Shown here piece by piece: positions 4,294 through 61,326 of a stretch of 64,000 bases of DNA. Position 1 is the first letter of the stretch; each line of letters opens with the position of its first letter. The stretch covers positions 116,870,001 to 116,934,000 of the forward strand of contig OX597823.1 in the NCBI GenBank assembly GCA_951406725.2, read 5' to 3'. This stretch comes from Octopus vulgaris (taxonomy: Eukaryota). Below the pieces are notes generated by a model. That model worked only from the letters and a program-made list of their open reading frames with translations. It ran no database searches and was not told the origin of the DNA. Made by a program: the position numbers and the translations under genes.

Positions 4294-5165
4294 CATCATC
4301 GTCGTCGTCGTCGTCATCATCATCATCATCATCATCATTATTATCATTATATATTTTTTGTTTGATTTCCATTTTATTTCATCCTCCAGCTAGATCTTAA
4401 CCCCTATCAAAGTCACTTTCCACATTCACAAAGATGTATACTGAGGAGAATCATGCTGAGACACTGGACAACCCTATGTTCTTTGTCCAAGTCATATGCT
4501 CATCGTTATGACAACAGCAGACCTGCAGACAAATCACTTTGCCCTGTTCATTTCTGTTACTTTACATTCTTAGTTCAAAATTTTGCTTGAGTCAACTTTG
4601 GCTTGTATTTCTCTATCATCAGTATAATCAACTGCTATCTTGTTTGGTCATGTTTTTACAGTATTCTTATATTTATTGCATATTTTCACTGCACCGCTGA
4701 GTGCAGTTCTGTGCACCTAGGATATTCACAATGTTTGTTTTGTCTTGTATTGAAATAACTTTAAGTATTATTGTGTGTTGTGCAGTATCTAGCTGTATAT
4801 AGTATCTATAAATTGATTTAAAAGTAGAGCATGTGAGTGTGTGTGTGCATGCATGTATATGTGTGCATGTGTTATATACATACACACACATACATACACT
4901 CACCACAAACACACATGCATGCACAAGGGATATATATATATGTATATATATATGATAGAAATATTAAAATAACTAAGTCTCTCTAAAAGAGAACAGCGGC
5001 AGCGTTCCCGGAAAATAATAGTTATCGCCATACTAATATGGCATTCTTATAAAAATAAGAAAAAAGCTGTCCGCTTATTAGCTCCATGAGGCCATCGCCT
5101 TAAGTTAGCTATTTGATACACAAACTGTATCCATATAACCTTCGAACAAGGGAGGTCAGTCGCTC

Positions 5166-5243
5166 CACACTACTTGACCGGCAGCTACAGACGCGTTTCG
5201 GAGTATTGCCCCTTTTCAATGCAGCGTAGCCAGCCAGTAGGTG
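5166..5243 (-). ncRNA. Type I hammerhead ribozyme, U3-A8 core variant (copy 1)
   Basis: GCUGCA-UUGAAAA-GGGG(CAAUA)CUCC-GAAA-CGCG-UC-UGUAGC. Stem I extends past a UAC/U internal loop via CUGGC/GCCGG, GG/UC, CUACU/AGUAG and CAC/GUG. Predicted GUC cleavage between 5190 and 5189. Confidence 0.85.
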
Positions 5244-5527
5244 TCGCTTCCGACAATCTCTGTTCGATGGTTTTATTTACCTAGTTTCGGTGGAATACAT
5301 CCACTTGTTTTCAATAATAGAAATATTAAAATAACTAAGTCTCTCTAAAAGAGAACAGCGGCAGCGTTCCCGGAAAATAATAGTTATCGCCATACTAATA
5401 TGGCATTCTTATAAAAATAAGAAAAAAGCTGTCCGCTTATTAGCTCCATGAGGCCATCGCCTTAAGTTAGCTATTTGATACACAAACTGTATCCATATAA
5501 CCTTCGAACAAGGGAGGTCAGTCGCTC

Positions 5528-5605
5528 CACACTACTTGACCGGCAGCTACAGACGCGTTTCGGAGTATTGCCCCTTTTCAATGCAGCGTAGCCAGCCAGT
5601 AGGTG
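5528..5605 (-). ncRNA. Type I hammerhead ribozyme (copy 2)
   Basis: Same sequence as copy 1, offset +362. Confidence 0.85.
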
Positions 5606-5889
5606 TCGCTTCCGACAATCTCTGTTCGATGGTTTTATTTACCTAGTTTCGGTGGAATACATCCACTTGTTTTCAATAATAGAAATATTAAAATAACTAA
5701 GTCTCTCTAAAAGAGAACAGCGGCAGCGTTCCCGGAAAATAATAGTTATCGCCATACTAATATGGCATTCTTATAAAAATAAGAAAAAAGCTGTCCGCTT
5801 ATTAGCTCCATGAGGCCATCGCCTTAAGTTAGCTATTTGATACACAAACTGTATCCATATAACCTTCGAACAAGGGAGGTCAGTCGCTC

Positions 5890-5967
5890 CACACTACTTG
5901 ACCGGCAGCTACAGACGCGTTTCGGAGTATTGCCCCTTTTCAATGCAGCGTAGCCAGCCAGTAGGTG
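5890..5967 (-). ncRNA. Type I hammerhead ribozyme (copy 3)
   Basis: Same sequence as copy 1, offset +724. Confidence 0.85.
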
Positions 5968-6251
5968 TCGCTTCCGACAATCTCTGTTCGATGGTTTTAT
6001 TTACCTAGTTTCGGTGGAATACATCCACTTGTTTTCAATAATAGAAATATTAAAATAACTAAGTCTCTCTAAAAGAGAACAGCGGCAGCGTTCCCGGAAA
6101 ATAATAGTTATCGCCATACTAATATGGCATTCTTATAAAAATAAGAAAAAAGCTGTCCGCTTATTAGCTCCATGAGGCCATCGCCTTAAGTTAGCTATTT
6201 GATACACAAACTGTATCCATATAACCTTCGAACAAGGGAGGTCAGTCGCTC

Positions 6252-58204: not shown

Positions 58205-58730
58205 ATCTAACATGTATTTTTTCAAGTTTGCATGGGTTGGACAGGTGTTTTTGCCAGTTCAATATCTTGTGACTAGGTGTAGTCCTCTGTCATTTTCTTT
58301 ATGGGAGTCAACCTCCAAGCATCATCTTTCACCACTTTTTCCACTATCTTCTTCCATTCTCCTCTTCTTCTTCTTCTTAAATGACTTAGCACTTCCATAC
58401 TCTACTAACATCTTCCATACGCATCACATATCTATACTAGCCCGGTCTTCCCTCTTGTACCCTGCTTCTAATTCCTCACATATCCACCTTTCTCTCAGAT
58501 CATTTCTAATCTGTCATTCATGCTTCCTTACATCACACATCCGGATCATTCTCACCTTCTTCCTTTCCAGCCACTGAACACTCTTTTCGTTTATAGCTCG
58601 TGTTACATTATCATGCAACATTACACTTGATACACAGGCACCATACAATGCACCCTCGACTTAAAAAGACAATCCCTCATGTTGCCAACAAAGGTAATAA
58701 CTCCTTGGACTTTGCCACCACATTTTCCAA
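58205..58730 (-). mobile_element. Decayed RTE LINE 3' fragment
   Basis: The reverse complement resembles ELLPLL..KG.SLR..G.LY.ACV.S.MLH and the downstream RTE C-terminus. Confidence 0.65.
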
Positions 58731-60014
58731 AGTACATTTTTTTCTAAAAATTACCCAATTCTTTAAAAAAGTTTCTTTCAACTAGTTTTCATTTATTTCT
58801 TATTTCTCCTTTTCTTTTTCTAATCTGACTGACTTATAACTGTTTGGATTTCCCATTTATCCCCCGATCTCACATGTGATATAAAAGGCATCGAGAGAGC
58901 TACATTGCTACTATTTACGGTCTACACTCATGATATGGCCTCAACTCAGCTGTGTTATTCCTGACATTTTATTTCTGAGAATTATGCTGCTTACCTACAT
59001 ACATACATATATATATATATATATATATATGATGATGATGATGATGTATGTATATATGTACGTGTGTGTGTATATATATATATATATATATATATACATA
59101 CATACACACACATATATATATATATGCAAGTGTCCTCTACTATAGACTTGGGACAACCAAAGCCTTGTGAGTGGAATTGGTTGACGGAAACTGAAAGAAG
59201 CCTGTCGTATATATGTGTATATATGTGTGTGTGTATGTGTTTGTGTGTCTGTATCCCCCCCCCCCAACATCACTTGACAACTGATGCTGGTGTATTTACA
59301 TTCCTGTAACTTAGCTGTTCGGCAAAAGACACTGATAGAATAAGTACTAGGCATACAAAGAATAAGTCCTGGGGTCGATTTGCTCGACTAAAGGCAATGC
59401 TCCAGCATGGCCACAGTCAAATGACTGAAACAAGTAAAAGAGTAAAAGAGCAAAGTGTATGTGTGTACACAAAGACTTACACACATACATGCATACATGA
59501 ATATATATATATACATACATATATATGTATGAATGTGTGTGTGGCTATGTGTGTATAAAAGTGGGTTTGGAGGGATATATTATCTGGGAAGATACCGTAT
59601 CAGCTCTCAGTTGAGTTCCAGTTAATGGCTAACCACAGTGATCAGTATTTATGTCTGTGACTACAAATTGCTGTTAGTCACTCGGTGAATCCTTCTGATG
59701 GGTAATTTCGTGTACTCTTTGCTGAAGCAGGAATATGTATGGGTGATTATAATATGCTGTATATAACTATAAAATAAATTCTGTGGATGTACTCTTTATT
59801 ATAAACATTTATATACATAGGTGCAGGAGTGGCTGTATGGTAAGTAGCTTGCTTACCAATCACATGGTTCTGGGTTCAGTCCCACTGCATGGCACCTTGG
59901 GCAAGTGTCTTCTACTATAGCCACGGGCTAACCAGAGCCTTGTGAGTGTATTTAGTAGACAGAAACTAAAGGAAGCCTGTCGTATGAATATATATGTATA
60001 TATATATATATTTA

Positions 60015-60506
60015 ATGTAGGATAAAATTTTTTTTGAAAAAAAAAATTTTATCAATGGCCAGCATATTAAAAAATACATTTAAAGGTTAAAATTATAAAC
60101 AACTTATAAATAAGGGCAAAGGAAAAAATTTCTAATGCCAAATATGCCGAAAATTGGATATATTGTCCATTACCATATAATTTTTCACAATATGCACGCT
60201 ACTCAAAAAAAGGTCGACAGAAATTTCTAAAAAATTCCATTATTACCATATCGGACCGATTTTAGGGTTAGTTCATAAGAACCCTCCCTTCGTCAGTGAT
60301 AAATGTGGCAATGAAATAAATGAGATACTTACTCATACCCATGGAAGAAGTGATATGGTAATAATGGAATTTTTTTAGAAATTTCTGTCGGCTTTTTTTC
60401 GAGTAGCGTGCGTATTGTGAAAAATTTTATGGTAATGGACAATATGTCCAATTTTCGGCATATTTGGCATTAGAAATTTTTTCGTTTGCCCTTATTTATA
60501 AGTTGT
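60015..60506 (-). mobile_element. PLE-pLTR-like foldback: ~155-bp inverted arms (60099-60253 / 60351-60506) with an HHR between them
   Basis: The arms are reverse complements; (TA)n on both flanks. Confidence 0.8.
60249..60301 (-). ncRNA. Degenerate type I hammerhead
   Basis: UAUCA-CUGACGA-AGGG(AG GGUUC UUAU GAACU AA)CCCU-AAAA-UCGG-UC-CGAUA; three transitions away from GAAA-CCGG-UC-UGAUA. Confidence 0.6.
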
Positions 60507-60714
60507 ATATATATATATATATATGTATGTATGTATAAATGTGTGTTTGTTTGTGTGTCTATGTTTATCCTCCCCACCATCGCTTGATGGTGTTTACGTC
60601 CCTGTAATTTAGTAGTTCAGCCAAAGAGACTGATAAAATAAGTACTAGGCTTAAAGTACTATTATTTACATTATTTACAATTGACGGATATTTGTCCTCA
60701 TCATGTTTGTTGTC

Positions 60715-60760
60715 AATACAACGTTTCAGCTGAGATACCCGCCAGCCTTCATCAGGTGTC
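60715..60760 (-). ncRNA. HHR of the 49984 family in a single-arm insert (60655-60800)
   Basis: GACAC-CUGAUGA-A-GGCUG(GCGGGUAUCU)CAGCU-GAAACG-UU-GUAUU. Confidence 0.7.
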
Positions 60761-61326
60761 TTGGGGAAATTTCGAACCTGGGTTCTCATTCCTAAGGTTA
60801 GTCATTTATATTTATGTGTGTCTTTGTGTCTGTATTTGTCCTCCACCACTGCTTAACAACCATTGTTGATGTGATTACATCCATGTAACTTAGCAGTTCA
60901 GCAAAAGAAACCAATAAAATATGTACCATGCTCAAAAGAAAATATATATAAGTATTGCAGCTGATTAATTCAACTAAAGATTTTTCAGTGCCCCAGCATG
61001 GCCACAGTCTAAGAACTGAAACATGTAGAAGATAAAAGTCAGTGAAAAAGTAAAAGACCGTGAACATGAACTTTATAGTTTCCTAGACTCAAGGGTGGAG
61101 AGGAAGAAATCACCCTCGAACCAGACACCTGGTTCAAATGCTCTCAATGGAGTGGATTCTGGTAAAGAAAAGATACAGAAAAAAAGAAAAAATCAAGAAC
61201 CAAGTTTACCTGTAAGCTTACACCCAAGAAAAGCAGATATTTCTAAAATCAGCTTGAATAAGAGATATTTACCAAGATAACAGTTTAATATTATGTGAGA
61301 AATGGATTCACGGTAGATGTACGAAA

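What the first reader, a model, noticed from the sequence alone, without database searches (positions are those of the whole stretch)
4955..60800. About six unrelated hammerhead repeat families in 64 kb with shared insertion logic
Seen: HHR motifs at 5.2-6.7 kb (x5), 37.8, 49.6/50.0/60.7, 54.3, 55.6 and 60.3 kb, with different cores and triplets (GUC, AUC, GUU, GUA). All have short palindromic stem III, most sit in TA/AAT microsatellites, four show head-to-head geometry, and one adjoins a PLE RT. Inference: this genome hosts a large ecosystem of PLE-dependent ribozyme RNAs, possibly with very high copy numbers and abundant small circRNAs. Extrapolation from one window is uncertain.
Basis: partly seen in the sequence, partly recalled or inferred. 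Interest (0 to 1): 0.75.

Follow-up and report, generated by a model that had tools for sequence, protein, structure and literature searches.

The report
Hammerhead-ribozyme retroelement families, Penelope-style insertions
This 64-kb stretch of a large, octopus-like genome holds copies of six different short repeat families that each carry a hammerhead self-cleaving RNA motif (or a near-miss) and are inserted with the hallmarks of Penelope-like retrotransposons; this is a known kind of element, seen here in new families at high copy number.

Summary
All six sites belong to real repeat families with about 400 to 19,000 or more genome copies, and each family carries a type-I hammerhead (HHR) motif with a short palindromic helix III. 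A relaxed descriptor finds 4 independent hits in the window against 0.085 expected from shuffles.

- **Core quality.** The consensus core is canonical in four families: A (362-nt tandem unit, U3-A8 variant), B, C and D. Two families depart by one invariant base: E has C4 and F has U6.
- **Dead copies.** Several window copies are mutated. The 49.6 kb copy has G17, the 60.7 kb copy has a broken stem I, the 60.3 kb copy has A12, and the 55.6 kb copy has damaged helices II and III.
- **Rfam.** The hammerhead models detect none of them.
- **Insertion anatomy.** It matches Penelope-like elements (PLEs): 3' ends abut (TA)n, 5' ends are truncated, and an inverted 5'-truncated copy lies head-to-head. 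A 34- or 60-nt extension sits at exactly one end (8/8 pairs in B, 14/14 loci in A).
- **PLE partner.** A PLE reverse-transcriptase remnant lies at 54.9-55.4 kb. The genome has thousands of related copies, some with open frames up to 785 aa.

These are new members of known kinds: PLE min-HHRs and non-LTR retrozymes. Self-cleavage, circular RNA and PLE dependence are inferred, not shown.

The parts
4952..7012 (-). Family A array: 5.7 tandem units of 362 nt, one U3-A8 hammerhead per unit. The 3' end (unit position about 362, ...CUAUCAU) abuts (TA)n at about 4926-4951. The 5' end is truncated inside the sixth HHR.
   Evidence: TRF: period 362, 5.7 copies, 99%. Descriptor hits x5. BLAST map.
7006..7134 (+). 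Family A inverted, 5'-truncated partial copy (unit positions 168-296), joined head-to-head with a 7-nt overlap. Its 3' end abuts (AT)n at 7135 onward.
   Evidence: Sequence; BLAST.
37640..37960 (-). Family C single copy of about 320 nt with (TA)n on both sides. HHR at 37852-37794 (CUGACGA, two-part helix II, extra A before G12, helix III AUCCgGGAU, triplet AUC).
49592..50109 (.). Family B head-to-head pair. The left arm is on the minus strand (HHR core at 49676, dead: G17) and the right arm on the plus strand (HHR 49984-50029, intact). The 5'-truncated heads join at about 49829, and each arm has an internal (AAT)n. The 34-nt 3' extension is present only at the right end (about 50076-50109).
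60655..60800 (-). Family B third copy, 5'-truncated with no head. HHR core at 60755, with stem I broken.
60100..60350 (-). Family D full unit of about 250 nt. HHR-like motif at 60302-60243, with A at position 12 in this copy.
60352..60505 (+). Family D inverted 5'-truncated copy (unit positions 99-251), head-to-head with the full unit. Together they form the roughly 420-nt palindrome.
54278..54363 (+). Family E mini-element of about 86 nt. HHR-like motif at 54286-54335 with C at core position 4. The 3' end abuts the (TA)n/(CATA)n tract at 54364-54586.
55512..55718 (+). Family F copy of about 205 nt, between (AT)n at 55423-55511 and a TA-rich end. HHR-like motif near 55590-55640 with U at core position 6. 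This copy is further mutated.
54863..55418 (-). Remnant of a PLE-type reverse transcriptase, probably Hydra clade. Profile positions 163-206 map to about 55418-55287 and positions 298-380 (motifs MGSxDSAQ and the YRDD region) to about 55108-54863.
54070..54281 (+). Left copy of a 212-nt direct repeat (99% identical) of otherwise unique DNA. It flanks the nest holding E, the PLE remnant and F.
55769..55980 (+). Right copy of the 212-nt direct repeat.

Best explanation
The window holds insertions of six families of short, non-coding retroelements. Each family's RNA carries a type-I hammerhead motif of the Penelope-like-element kind (a 'min-HHR'). In these motifs helix III is too short to fold alone, and it is palindromic, so two copies must pair before either can cleave.

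**Copying and insertion (inferred).** The elements are copied by the RT/GIY-YIG machinery of autonomous PLEs, which are abundant in this genome.
1. The endonuclease nicks a (TA)n tract.
2. The exposed TA-rich 3' end anneals to a UA-rich site near the RNA's 3' end and primes cDNA synthesis.
3. The opposite strand primes a second cDNA at a site offset by 34 nt (family B) or 60 nt (family A).
4. The two 5'-truncated cDNAs are joined by microhomology, giving head-to-head structures with both 3' ends facing outward.

**Family A is a non-LTR retrozyme.**
- Transcripts of its 362-nt tandem arrays would self-cleave into monomers.
- A tRNA ligase would close the monomers into circles.
- The circles would be copied round and round, giving new arrays.

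**The other families.** B, C, D, E and F are single-unit or paired, SINE-like versions. In them the ribozyme is probably a module inherited from a PLE 3' end. In E and F it is probably crippled.

**Shown versus inferred.** Shown: motif anatomy, copy numbers, insertion geometry, target preference, and the presence of PLE RT genes. Inferred: cleavage, dimer requirement, circularisation, priming details, and which PLE mobilises which family.
For: **The motifs exceed chance.** 4 hits against 0.085 expected.

**Family consensus sequences keep the core even where window copies are mutated.**
- D: 276 exact copies carry G12.
- F: the consensus has a 4-bp helix II and helix III ACGU.

**Helix II covaries.**
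- A: GGGG/CUCC against GGGG/CCCC.
- E: ACG-GAAA-CGU against CG-GCAA-UG.

**Family A**
- Dispersed arrays of 1-9 units at 99-100% identity lie on many chromosomes.
- About 30 of 33 outer ends stop at ...CUAUUAU next to (TA)n.
- In 14 of 14 two-ended loci, one end lies at unit position 296-302 and the other at 359-362.
- 5' truncation points vary.
- The monomer RNA folds far better than shuffles (z = -7.06), with HHR stem I closing a long branched rod.

**Family B**
- 19,140 core matches.
- All 12 close pairs in the listing are divergent, minus then plus.
- The 34-nt extension is present at exactly one end in 8 of 8 pairs. This matches the PLE 'tail' (PMC8557442).

**Families C and E**
- C: 8 of 40 loci carry an adjacent inverted 5'-truncated copy.
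- E: palindromic pairs are joined at a sharp 5' end.

**PLE presence**
- A window remnant matches a family of proteins of 427-806 aa.
- These proteins carry DKT, an RW[R/K] motif, YRDDG and a weak C-terminal GIY-YIG match.
- There are 5656 candidate loci, with open frames up to 785 aa.
Against: - Rfam hammerhead models do not score A, B or C even at E<=10. Nothing reaches gathering level.
- E and F change an invariant core base at the family level, so they may never cleave.
- No autonomous PLE was shown to share its 3' end with any of the six families.
- B ends in short (UGUAAAUAA)n repeats and is not inserted in (TA)n, which also recalls LINE-dependent SINEs.
- The PLE assignment of the RT family rests on motifs and weak Pfam hits (GIY-YIG E=0.002-0.012; RVT_1 E=0.019).
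- Published PLE min-HHRs cleave poorly in vitro (PMC4209133).
- No RNA data were available.
Confidence: 0.8

Rival explanations
1. The elements are ordinary LINE-dependent SINEs and satellites. The hammerhead-like motifs are passengers with no role, and the window's own LINE RTs (42.5-47 kb) or their relatives do the copying.
For: - LINE-type RT ORFs with YADD motifs lie in the window.
- Family B has box A/B-like motifs and a short tandem 3' repeat, as many LINE-partnered SINEs do.
- E and F carry crippled cores yet have multiplied.
Against: - LINE target-primed insertion is not known (my knowledge) to give paired copies with both complete 3' ends outward.
- LINE insertion does not explain a 34/60-nt extension at exactly one end (8/8 and 14/14).
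- It does not explain the near-exclusive (TA)n targeting.
- All three are described as PLE traits not seen in LINE insertion (PMC8557442).
Confidence: 0.1
2. The palindromic units, especially D and the B pairs, are DNA-level foldback or MITE-type transposons with terminal inverted repeats. The HHR-like strings are incidental.
For: D forms a roughly 420-nt near-perfect palindrome, and the B pair a roughly 500-nt one.
Against: - Most genomic copies of B, C and D are single arms.
- The inner junction sits at variable 5'-truncation points while the outer ends are fixed.
- Family A forms tandem arrays.
- No fixed-length target duplication was seen.
Confidence: 0.04
3. The motifs are chance matches produced by a permissive descriptor in AT-rich, microsatellite-rich DNA.
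For: - Rfam finds nothing.
- The strict pattern finds nothing.
- One descriptor hit (17634-17672) is probably chance.
- The relaxed one-mismatch search needed for E is weak evidence on its own.
Against: - 4 hits against 0.085 expected, and 3 against 0.03 at the stricter stem threshold.
- Each motif is the conserved centre of a family with hundreds to thousands of copies.
- Reversed-pattern controls give 0.
- Helix II covaries.
Confidence: 0.03

Closest known systems
Minimal hammerheads of Penelope-like elements (Cervera & de la Pena 2014, PMC4209133)
   Same: - Type-I motif with a short palindromic helix III.
- An unpaired nucleotide between A9 and 10.1 (B, F).
- A U3-A8 core variant (A).
- Many heterogeneous families per genome.
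- Pairs on opposite strands 100-700 bp apart.
- Mostly solo copies.
   Different: - Here the motifs sit mainly in short non-coding elements, not in pLTRs of coding PLEs.
- C has its extra nucleotide before G12.
- E and F change core positions 4 and 6.
- The paper's text does not mention molluscs ('mollus' 0 matches).
Metazoan non-LTR retrozymes (Cervera & de la Pena 2020, PMC7229834; Li, Clavereau & Pollet 2026 preprint, doi 10.64898/2026.07.22.740005)
   Same: Family A has tandem units (362 nt) of about the size of the roughly 350-nt retrozymes in that paper (names Ax353, Mg353). It carries one type-I HHR per unit, forms dispersed short arrays and has a strongly folded monomer RNA. A PLE origin has been proposed for this class.
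   Different: - Circular RNA is not shown here.
- The core is U3-A8.
- The (TA)n-specific ends, two alternative 3' ends 60 nt apart and obligatory head-to-head partner are not mentioned in the passages of those papers that I read.
- The other five families are not tandem.
Structural hallmarks of PLE insertions, including the Hydra clade and non-autonomous Chlamys elements such as MRC1 (Craig et al. 2021, PMC8557442)
   Same: - 5' truncation, partial tandems and an adjacent inverted 5'-truncated copy.
- A 30-40-bp tail at one end.
- (TA)n bias.
- The RT remnant shares the DKT and RW[R/K] motifs and the C-terminal GIY-YIG reported for Hydra-clade PLEs.
- Related contigs are under 3 kb.
   Different: - The non-autonomous elements here carry HHRs and are far shorter (86-362 nt).
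- Clade membership of the RT was judged from motifs, not from a tree.
Schistosoma Sm-alpha, a SINE-like repeat with an active hammerhead (Ferbeyre et al. 1998; cited in PMC4209133; details from my own knowledge)
   Same: Family B pairs a Pol III-type head (box A exact, box B 10 of 11) with a hammerhead in the body, at tens of thousands of copies.
   Different: - B's head is not recognised as tRNA by ARAGORN or Rfam.
- B has an internal (AAT)n.
- B has a PLE-type one-sided tail, and about a quarter of its copies lie in head-to-head pairs.
Newt satellite 2 and viroid double hammerheads (Forster et al. 1988; cited in PMC4209133)
   Same: Helix III is too weak for a monomer, so activity is expected only when two motifs pair.
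   Different: Not tested here. Only family A supplies two sense motifs on one transcript.

Membership tests
Hammerhead ribozyme, type I | Conserved core CUGANGA ... GAAA with a cleavage triplet NUH (C3-G8 may covary to U3-A8) | tested here: met
   - Met by A (U3-A8), B and C in the window.
- Met by D at family level (276 copies with G12), though the window copy has A12.
- NOT met by E (C4) or F (U6).
Hammerhead ribozyme, type I | Three helices around the core, with stem I open (5' and 3' strands at the ends) | tested here: met
   - Stems in the window: I 5-6 bp, II 3-6 bp, III 2-5 bp.
- Helix II covaries in A and E.
- The test is partly circular, because the descriptor demands these stems.
Hammerhead ribozyme, type I | Score at or above the Rfam RF00163 gathering threshold | tested here: not met
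   - There are no hits in the window at gathering level.
- There are no hammerhead hits at E<=10 in 200-500-nt sub-windows around A, B and C.
- Elsewhere in the genome 8 sites pass.
Hammerhead ribozyme, type I | Site-specific self-cleavage | not testable with these tools
   Needs in vitro transcription or RNA-end mapping.
PLE-associated minimal hammerhead | Short palindromic helix III (15.2-16.2 and loop 3) | tested here: met
   A ACGCGU; B ACGU; C AUCC-G-GGAU; D AUCGG-U-CCGAU; E ACUC-A-GAGU; F ACGU in the consensus.
PLE-associated minimal hammerhead | Location in the pseudo-LTR or 3' region of an element encoding RT + GIY-YIG | tested here: inconclusive
   - Only a decayed PLE remnant lies beside E and F, on the other strand.
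- One family A locus has a PLE C-terminal ORF about 560 nt away (L041).
- Intact PLE copies could not be fetched.
Non-LTR retrozyme | Head-to-tail tandem units (about 350 nt in the published axolotl and mussel examples), each with a type-I HHR, at dispersed loci | tested here: met
   Family A only: 362-nt units, arrays of 1-9 units on many chromosomes, 99-100% identity. B-F are not tandem, apart from occasional partial tandems of F.
Non-LTR retrozyme | Expression as small circular RNA | not testable with these tools
   No RNA data. The only support is the strong predicted fold of the monomer (z = -7.06).
Non-autonomous PLE derivative | PLE insertion signature: 5' truncation, partial tandem, inverted 5'-truncated neighbour, one-sided 30-40-bp tail, microsatellite target | tested here: met
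   - A: (14/14 loci with one-sided 60-nt extra; about 30/33 ends in (TA)n).
- B: (12/12 divergent pairs; 8/8 one-sided 34-nt tail).
- C.
- D.
- E.
Non-autonomous PLE derivative | 3' end shared with an autonomous PLE of the same genome | not tested
The coordinates of long-ORF copies are listed.
tRNA-derived SINE (family B head) | 5' region recognisable as tRNA, with box A and box B | tested here: inconclusive
   - Box A TGGCGTAGTGG fits the consensus, and box B AGTTCGATTCC fits at 10 of 11 positions, about 43 nt downstream (consensus from my knowledge).
- ARAGORN finds no tRNA in 30 loci.
- Rfam lists no tRNA match at E<=10.
Penelope-like element, Hydra clade (RT remnant 54863-55418) | RT with DKT in place of DKG, an RWK-type motif, a divergent RT4(B), a C-terminal GIY-YIG, and length under 3 kb | tested here: inconclusive
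   - Full-length homologues show DKT, RW[R/K], MGSxDSAQ, invariant RDD and a CxC...GIY-YIG-like tail.
- Pfam hits are weak: GIY-YIG E=0.002-0.012 and RVT_1 E=0.019.
- Contigs are 2.6 kb.
- No tree was built and there is no PDB hit.

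The most novel reading that the evidence does not exclude
These short HHR elements may expose the still-unknown PLE integration mechanism in unusually clean form.

- Every insertion would be made by two priming events on opposite strands of a nicked (TA)n tract.
- The two events would start at two fixed template sites, 34 or 60 nt apart, and be joined by microhomology.
- An 86-nt element that is little more than one hammerhead (family E, with a C4 core) would then be enough to be recognised and copied.
- If so, the hammerhead fold itself, rather than its cleavage, would be the recognition module for the PLE RT. 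That would answer the open question of what HHRs do in PLEs.
Probability: 0.25. Interest if true: 0.65.

Novelty: new member of a known kind. Interest (0 to 1): 0.4.

Why it matters
Hammerheads in PLEs and retrozymes are established, but their role in PLE transposition is stated to be unclear (PMC8557442). This genome offers several things.

- **Many young families.** Family A copies are 100% identical across chromosomes.
- **Sharply defined ends.** The two-ended, one-sided-tail, (TA)n-specific signature can be read base by base.
- **Possible partners.** Thousands of PLE RT copies have long open frames.
- **A natural series of core variants.** The series runs from canonical cores through U3-A8 to C4 and U6. 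It could show whether cleavage is needed for spread.
- **Annotation.** In cephalopod genomes these families are easily mistaken for satellites, MITEs or microRNA-like hairpins.

Tried and rejected
- **Rfam.** Scans of the whole window and of sub-windows gave no hammerhead. The E-value scan is swamped by microsatellite look-alikes of mir-297/466.
- **Strict pattern.** CUGANGA + helix II + GAAA gave 0 hits, because every real motif has a variant or an extra base.
- **The RT at 42.5-47 kb as the 'PLE RT'.** Rejected: these are LINE-type (YADD, RVT_1, RTE-like C-terminus).
- **The 212-nt direct repeats as pseudo-LTRs.** Rejected: they are unique DNA found only here.
- **The tRNA call for B's head.** Negative with ARAGORN and Rfam.
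- **Profile search of the PLE-like protein family.** Against PDB there was nothing. Against Pfam there were only weak GIY-YIG and RVT_1 hits.
- **Contigs of two full-length homologues.** No clear hammerhead by eye in the sequenced ends of L094; L095 was not examined.
- **A PLE ORF near a family A array (L041).** It showed no sequence link to A.
- **Within-family covariation statistics.** Not pursued, because copies are 92-100% identical.

Full report
**Setting.** The window is G000:C10:116870001-116934000 of a 2.8-Gb, 227-contig assembly. It is AT-rich and full of TA, TG and AAT microsatellites. The closest named relative of a protein fragment encoded here is from Octopus bimaculoides (XP_014779971.1, 63% identity). 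The host is therefore probably an octopus or a close relative. That is an inference.

Rfam finds no family at gathering level. The E-value scan lists only microsatellite look-alikes of microRNAs. A strict CUGANGA-helix II-GAAA pattern finds nothing.

- C3-G8 or U3-A8;
- 0-1 extra nucleotide at 9/10 and 11/12;
- helix III of at least 2 bp with a loop of 0-8 nt;
- stem I of at least 4 bp, and H17 not G.

It finds 8 sites, which are 4 independent events:
- five in the 362-nt array;
- 37852-37794 on the minus strand;
- 49984-50029 on the plus strand;
- a weak hit at 17634-17672.

Block-wise dinucleotide shuffles give 0.085 +/- 0.33 sites. None of 200 shuffles reaches 3.

**The six families.** I name them A to F.

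*Family A (4952-7012, minus strand).*
- It has 5.7 tandem units of 362 nt at 99-100% identity.
- Each unit has GCUGCA-UUGAAAA-GGGG(CAAUA)CUCC-GAAA-CGCG-UC|UGUAGC. This is a U3-A8 core with a loop-less palindromic helix III (ACGCGU) and a GUC triplet.
- Genome-wide, short arrays of 1-9 units lie on many chromosomes at 99-100% identity (1130 first-look candidates).
- Subfamilies change helix II from G-U to G-C.
- The monomer RNA, cut at the predicted sites, folds at -123.9 kcal/mol against -88.2 +/- 5.1 for shuffles (z = -7.06). HHR stem I closes a long branched rod.

*Family B (49592-50109 as a pair; 60655-60800).*
- The motif is GACAC-CUGAUGA-a-GGCUG...CAGCY-GAAA-CG-UU|GUGUU.
- The 50.0-kb copy is intact.
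- The 49.6-kb copy has lost a U, which puts G at position 17.
- The 60.7-kb copy has a broken stem I.
- Thirty fetched loci show the full unit. It consists of a head with box A/B-like motifs, an internal (AAT)n, a body with the HHR, and a 3' end with 1-3 copies of a 9-nt repeat.
- ARAGORN and Rfam do not recognise the head as tRNA.
- The 27-nt core with up to 2 mismatches occurs 19,140 times, and the reversed control 0 times.

*Family C (37640-37960, minus strand).*
- The motif is CUGACGA, a helix II of 3 bp + A-rich internal loop + 5 bp, an extra A, then GAAA-UCCgGGAU-C.
- It has 1858 candidates, and 40 scored copies are at least 92% identical.
- The motif is conserved in 23 aligned copies.
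- The window copy is about 320 nt with (TA)n at both ends.

*Family D (60100-60505).*
- It has good stems and helix III AUCGG-U-CCGAU, but AAA where GAA should be.
- The family has 1795 candidates at 97-98% identity.
- The canonical ...CCCUGAAAUCGG... form has 276 exact 29-mer copies, including several of the best-matching loci.
- The family is therefore a true hammerhead family and the window copy is dead.

*Family E (54278-54363, plus strand).*
- The motif is CUGU-CCGAUGA-a-CG(GCAA)UG-g-GAAA-CUCaGAGU-A|ACAG.
- The family has 395 candidates at 97-100% identity and starts sharply at 54278.
- A diverged copy in L068 has helix II ACG(GAAA)CGU. The GNRA loop and the pairing are kept, but C at core position 4 is kept too.

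*Family F (55512-55718, plus strand).*
- Nothing passed even a one-mismatch scan in the window copy.
- The region belongs to a family with 3972 candidates, with 9 copies in my 250 kb of fetched loci.
- The 8-copy consensus reads CUUU-CUGUAGA-a-GAGC(GUAG)GCUC-GAAA-CG-UA|AAAG.
- This is complete except for U at core position 6.

The six families share no BLAST-detectable similarity.

**Shared insertion logic.** This is the strongest result.

*Family A*:
- In 20 independent loci, almost every insertion is an array with a variable 5' truncation, joined to an inverted 5'-truncated copy. Both outer ends are therefore 3' ends.
- About 30 of 33 outer ends stop at ...CUAUUAU directly against (TA)n.
- In 14 of 14 loci where both ends are seen, one end lies at unit position 296-302 and the other at 359-362.
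- The window copy obeys all of this. Its ends are (TA)n at 4951 and at 7135, the inverted partner is at 7006-7134, and the junction overlaps by 7 nt.

*Family B:*
- All 12 close pairs in the listing are divergent.
- A 34-nt 3' extension is present in 18 of 36 arms, and in 8 of 8 pairs at exactly one end.

*Families C, D and E:*
- C has an adjacent inverted 5'-truncated copy at 8 of 40 loci.
- D has one in the window and at two further loci.
- E often forms palindromes joined at its 5' end, with the 3' end in (TA)n.

These traits are listed as peculiar to PLE insertions and not seen in LINE insertion (PMC8557442):
- 5' truncation;
- partial tandems;
- an adjacent inverted 5'-truncated copy;
- a 30-40-bp tail at one end;
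- (TA)n preference.

**PLE genes.**
- The ORFs at 42535-43971 and 44604-47010 are LINE-type RTs.
- The minus-strand ORF at 55126-54467 has 98 homologues.
- The long homologues (619-806 aa) share DKT, an RW[R/K] motif, MGSxDSAQ and invariant RDD. They also share a C-terminal Cys-rich GIY-YIG-like segment.
- Pfam support is weak: GIY-YIG E=0.002-0.012 and RVT_1 E=0.019.
- DKT, an RWK-type motif, a divergent RT4(B) and a length under 3 kb are the stated marks of the Hydra clade, which has canonical HHRs.
- An HMM of these proteins matches two collinear pieces of the window at 55418-55287 and 55108-54863.
- The genome has 5656 candidate loci. All 150 scored loci have E<1e-25, and open frames reach 778-785 aa.
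- E, the remnant and F, with microsatellites, lie between two 212-nt direct repeats of otherwise unique DNA. This looks like a nest of insertions in one (TA)n tract. The origin of the 212-nt duplication is unexplained.

**Is the window an outlier?**
- In about 208 kb of fetched loci, after removing the targeted elements, the descriptor finds 6 HHRs of still other families, against about 0.3 expected. Their helix III sequences are ACUCUGAGU, AUCGUUCGAU, ACUCGGAGU, AUUGAUCCAAU, ACGUACGU and AUCCAGGAU.
- That is roughly 1 per 30-35 kb, against 1 per 16 kb in the window.
- The window is dense but not exceptional. A genome total of the order of 10^4-10^5 motifs is plausible, though this is a rough extrapolation from biased flanks.

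**Comparison with what is known.** Cervera & de la Pena 2014 (PMC4209133) describe:
- PLE 'min-HHRs' with palindromic helix III;
- an extra nucleotide between 9 and 10.1;
- a U3-A8 variant;
- pairs on opposite strands;
- massive heterogeneous occurrence;
- expected action as dimers, with low activity in vitro.

Cervera & de la Pena 2020 (PMC7229834) define non-LTR retrozymes. A 2026 preprint (doi 10.64898/2026.07.22.740005) argues that they are non-autonomous PLE derivatives. Family A fits the retrozyme definition. B-F fit solo or paired PLE-type HHR elements. B resembles the Sm-alpha SINE-like element of Schistosoma (my knowledge). The finding is therefore a set of new members of known kinds.

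The parts I did not find in the passages of the papers I read are:
- the base-level two-site, one-sided-extension rule in HHR-only elements;
- the 86-nt family E;
- the family-level C4 and U6 cores.

**Mechanism.** It is set out under the best explanation. The RNA steps (dimer cleavage, ligation to circles, rolling-circle copying, priming on UA-rich sites) are inferences from anatomy and from the cited literature. Nothing about RNA was measured here.

Noticed in passing
window 42535-43971 (+) and 44604-47010 (+): Two LINE-type reverse-transcriptase ORF remnants. The first has YADD. The second is RTE-like, with a PHD/C1-like Cys motif and an RLRWYGHV tail. A roughly 870-nt (TA)n tract at 44052-44919 separates them.
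   Followed up: partly
window 54070-54281 and 55769-55980: A 212-nt direct repeat (99% identical) of DNA found nowhere else in the genome. It brackets 1487 bp made of family E, a PLE remnant, family F and microsatellites. It could be a very long target duplication or a local duplication; this is unexplained.
   Followed up: partly
window 10525-10748, 19523-19746, 36300-36541, 59208-59431, 62638-62861 and others: A SINE-like repeat of about 240 nt in at least 8 copies in both orientations (83-89% identical). It often follows a TG/TA microsatellite and has no hammerhead.
   Followed up: no
window 53033-53508 and 56525-56917: Another interspersed repeat with 137-nt internal sub-repeats (motif GTGGCACATAAAAGGCACC). 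Two copies lie 3.4 kb apart at 85-93% identity.
   Followed up: no
window 17634-17672 (+): A weak descriptor hit (CUGAGGA, helix III 2 bp, stem I 4 bp) in non-repeated sequence. It is probably the one chance match.
   Followed up: partly
L004:2243-2299, L005:1372-1318, L052:1983-1928, L066:2520-2572, L066:3182-3135, L080:38-89: Six hammerheads of further families in the flanks of unrelated loci. All have a palindromic helix III, and several have a longer helix II or an extra C or U before G12.
   Followed up: partly
L041:2742-3362 (-): An open C-terminal part of the PLE-type protein (profile positions 512-702, E=9e-62), about 560 nt from a family A insertion in the same TA-rich tract. No sequence link to A was found.
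   Followed up: partly
L060 (G000:C13:54853705 region): The one family A locus not in (TA)n. Its two flanks, TTATCTTTAC... and AAAGATAAAT..., are reverse complements of each other. This hints at an inverted, not direct, duplication of the target.
   Followed up: no
window 8514-8933, 11953-12138, 28970-29135, 40833-41442, 44052-44919, 54364-54586, 58999-59125: Long TA/TG/CATA microsatellites give dozens of sub-threshold Rfam matches to mir-297, mir-466 and mir-3149. These are composition artefacts.
   Followed up: yes
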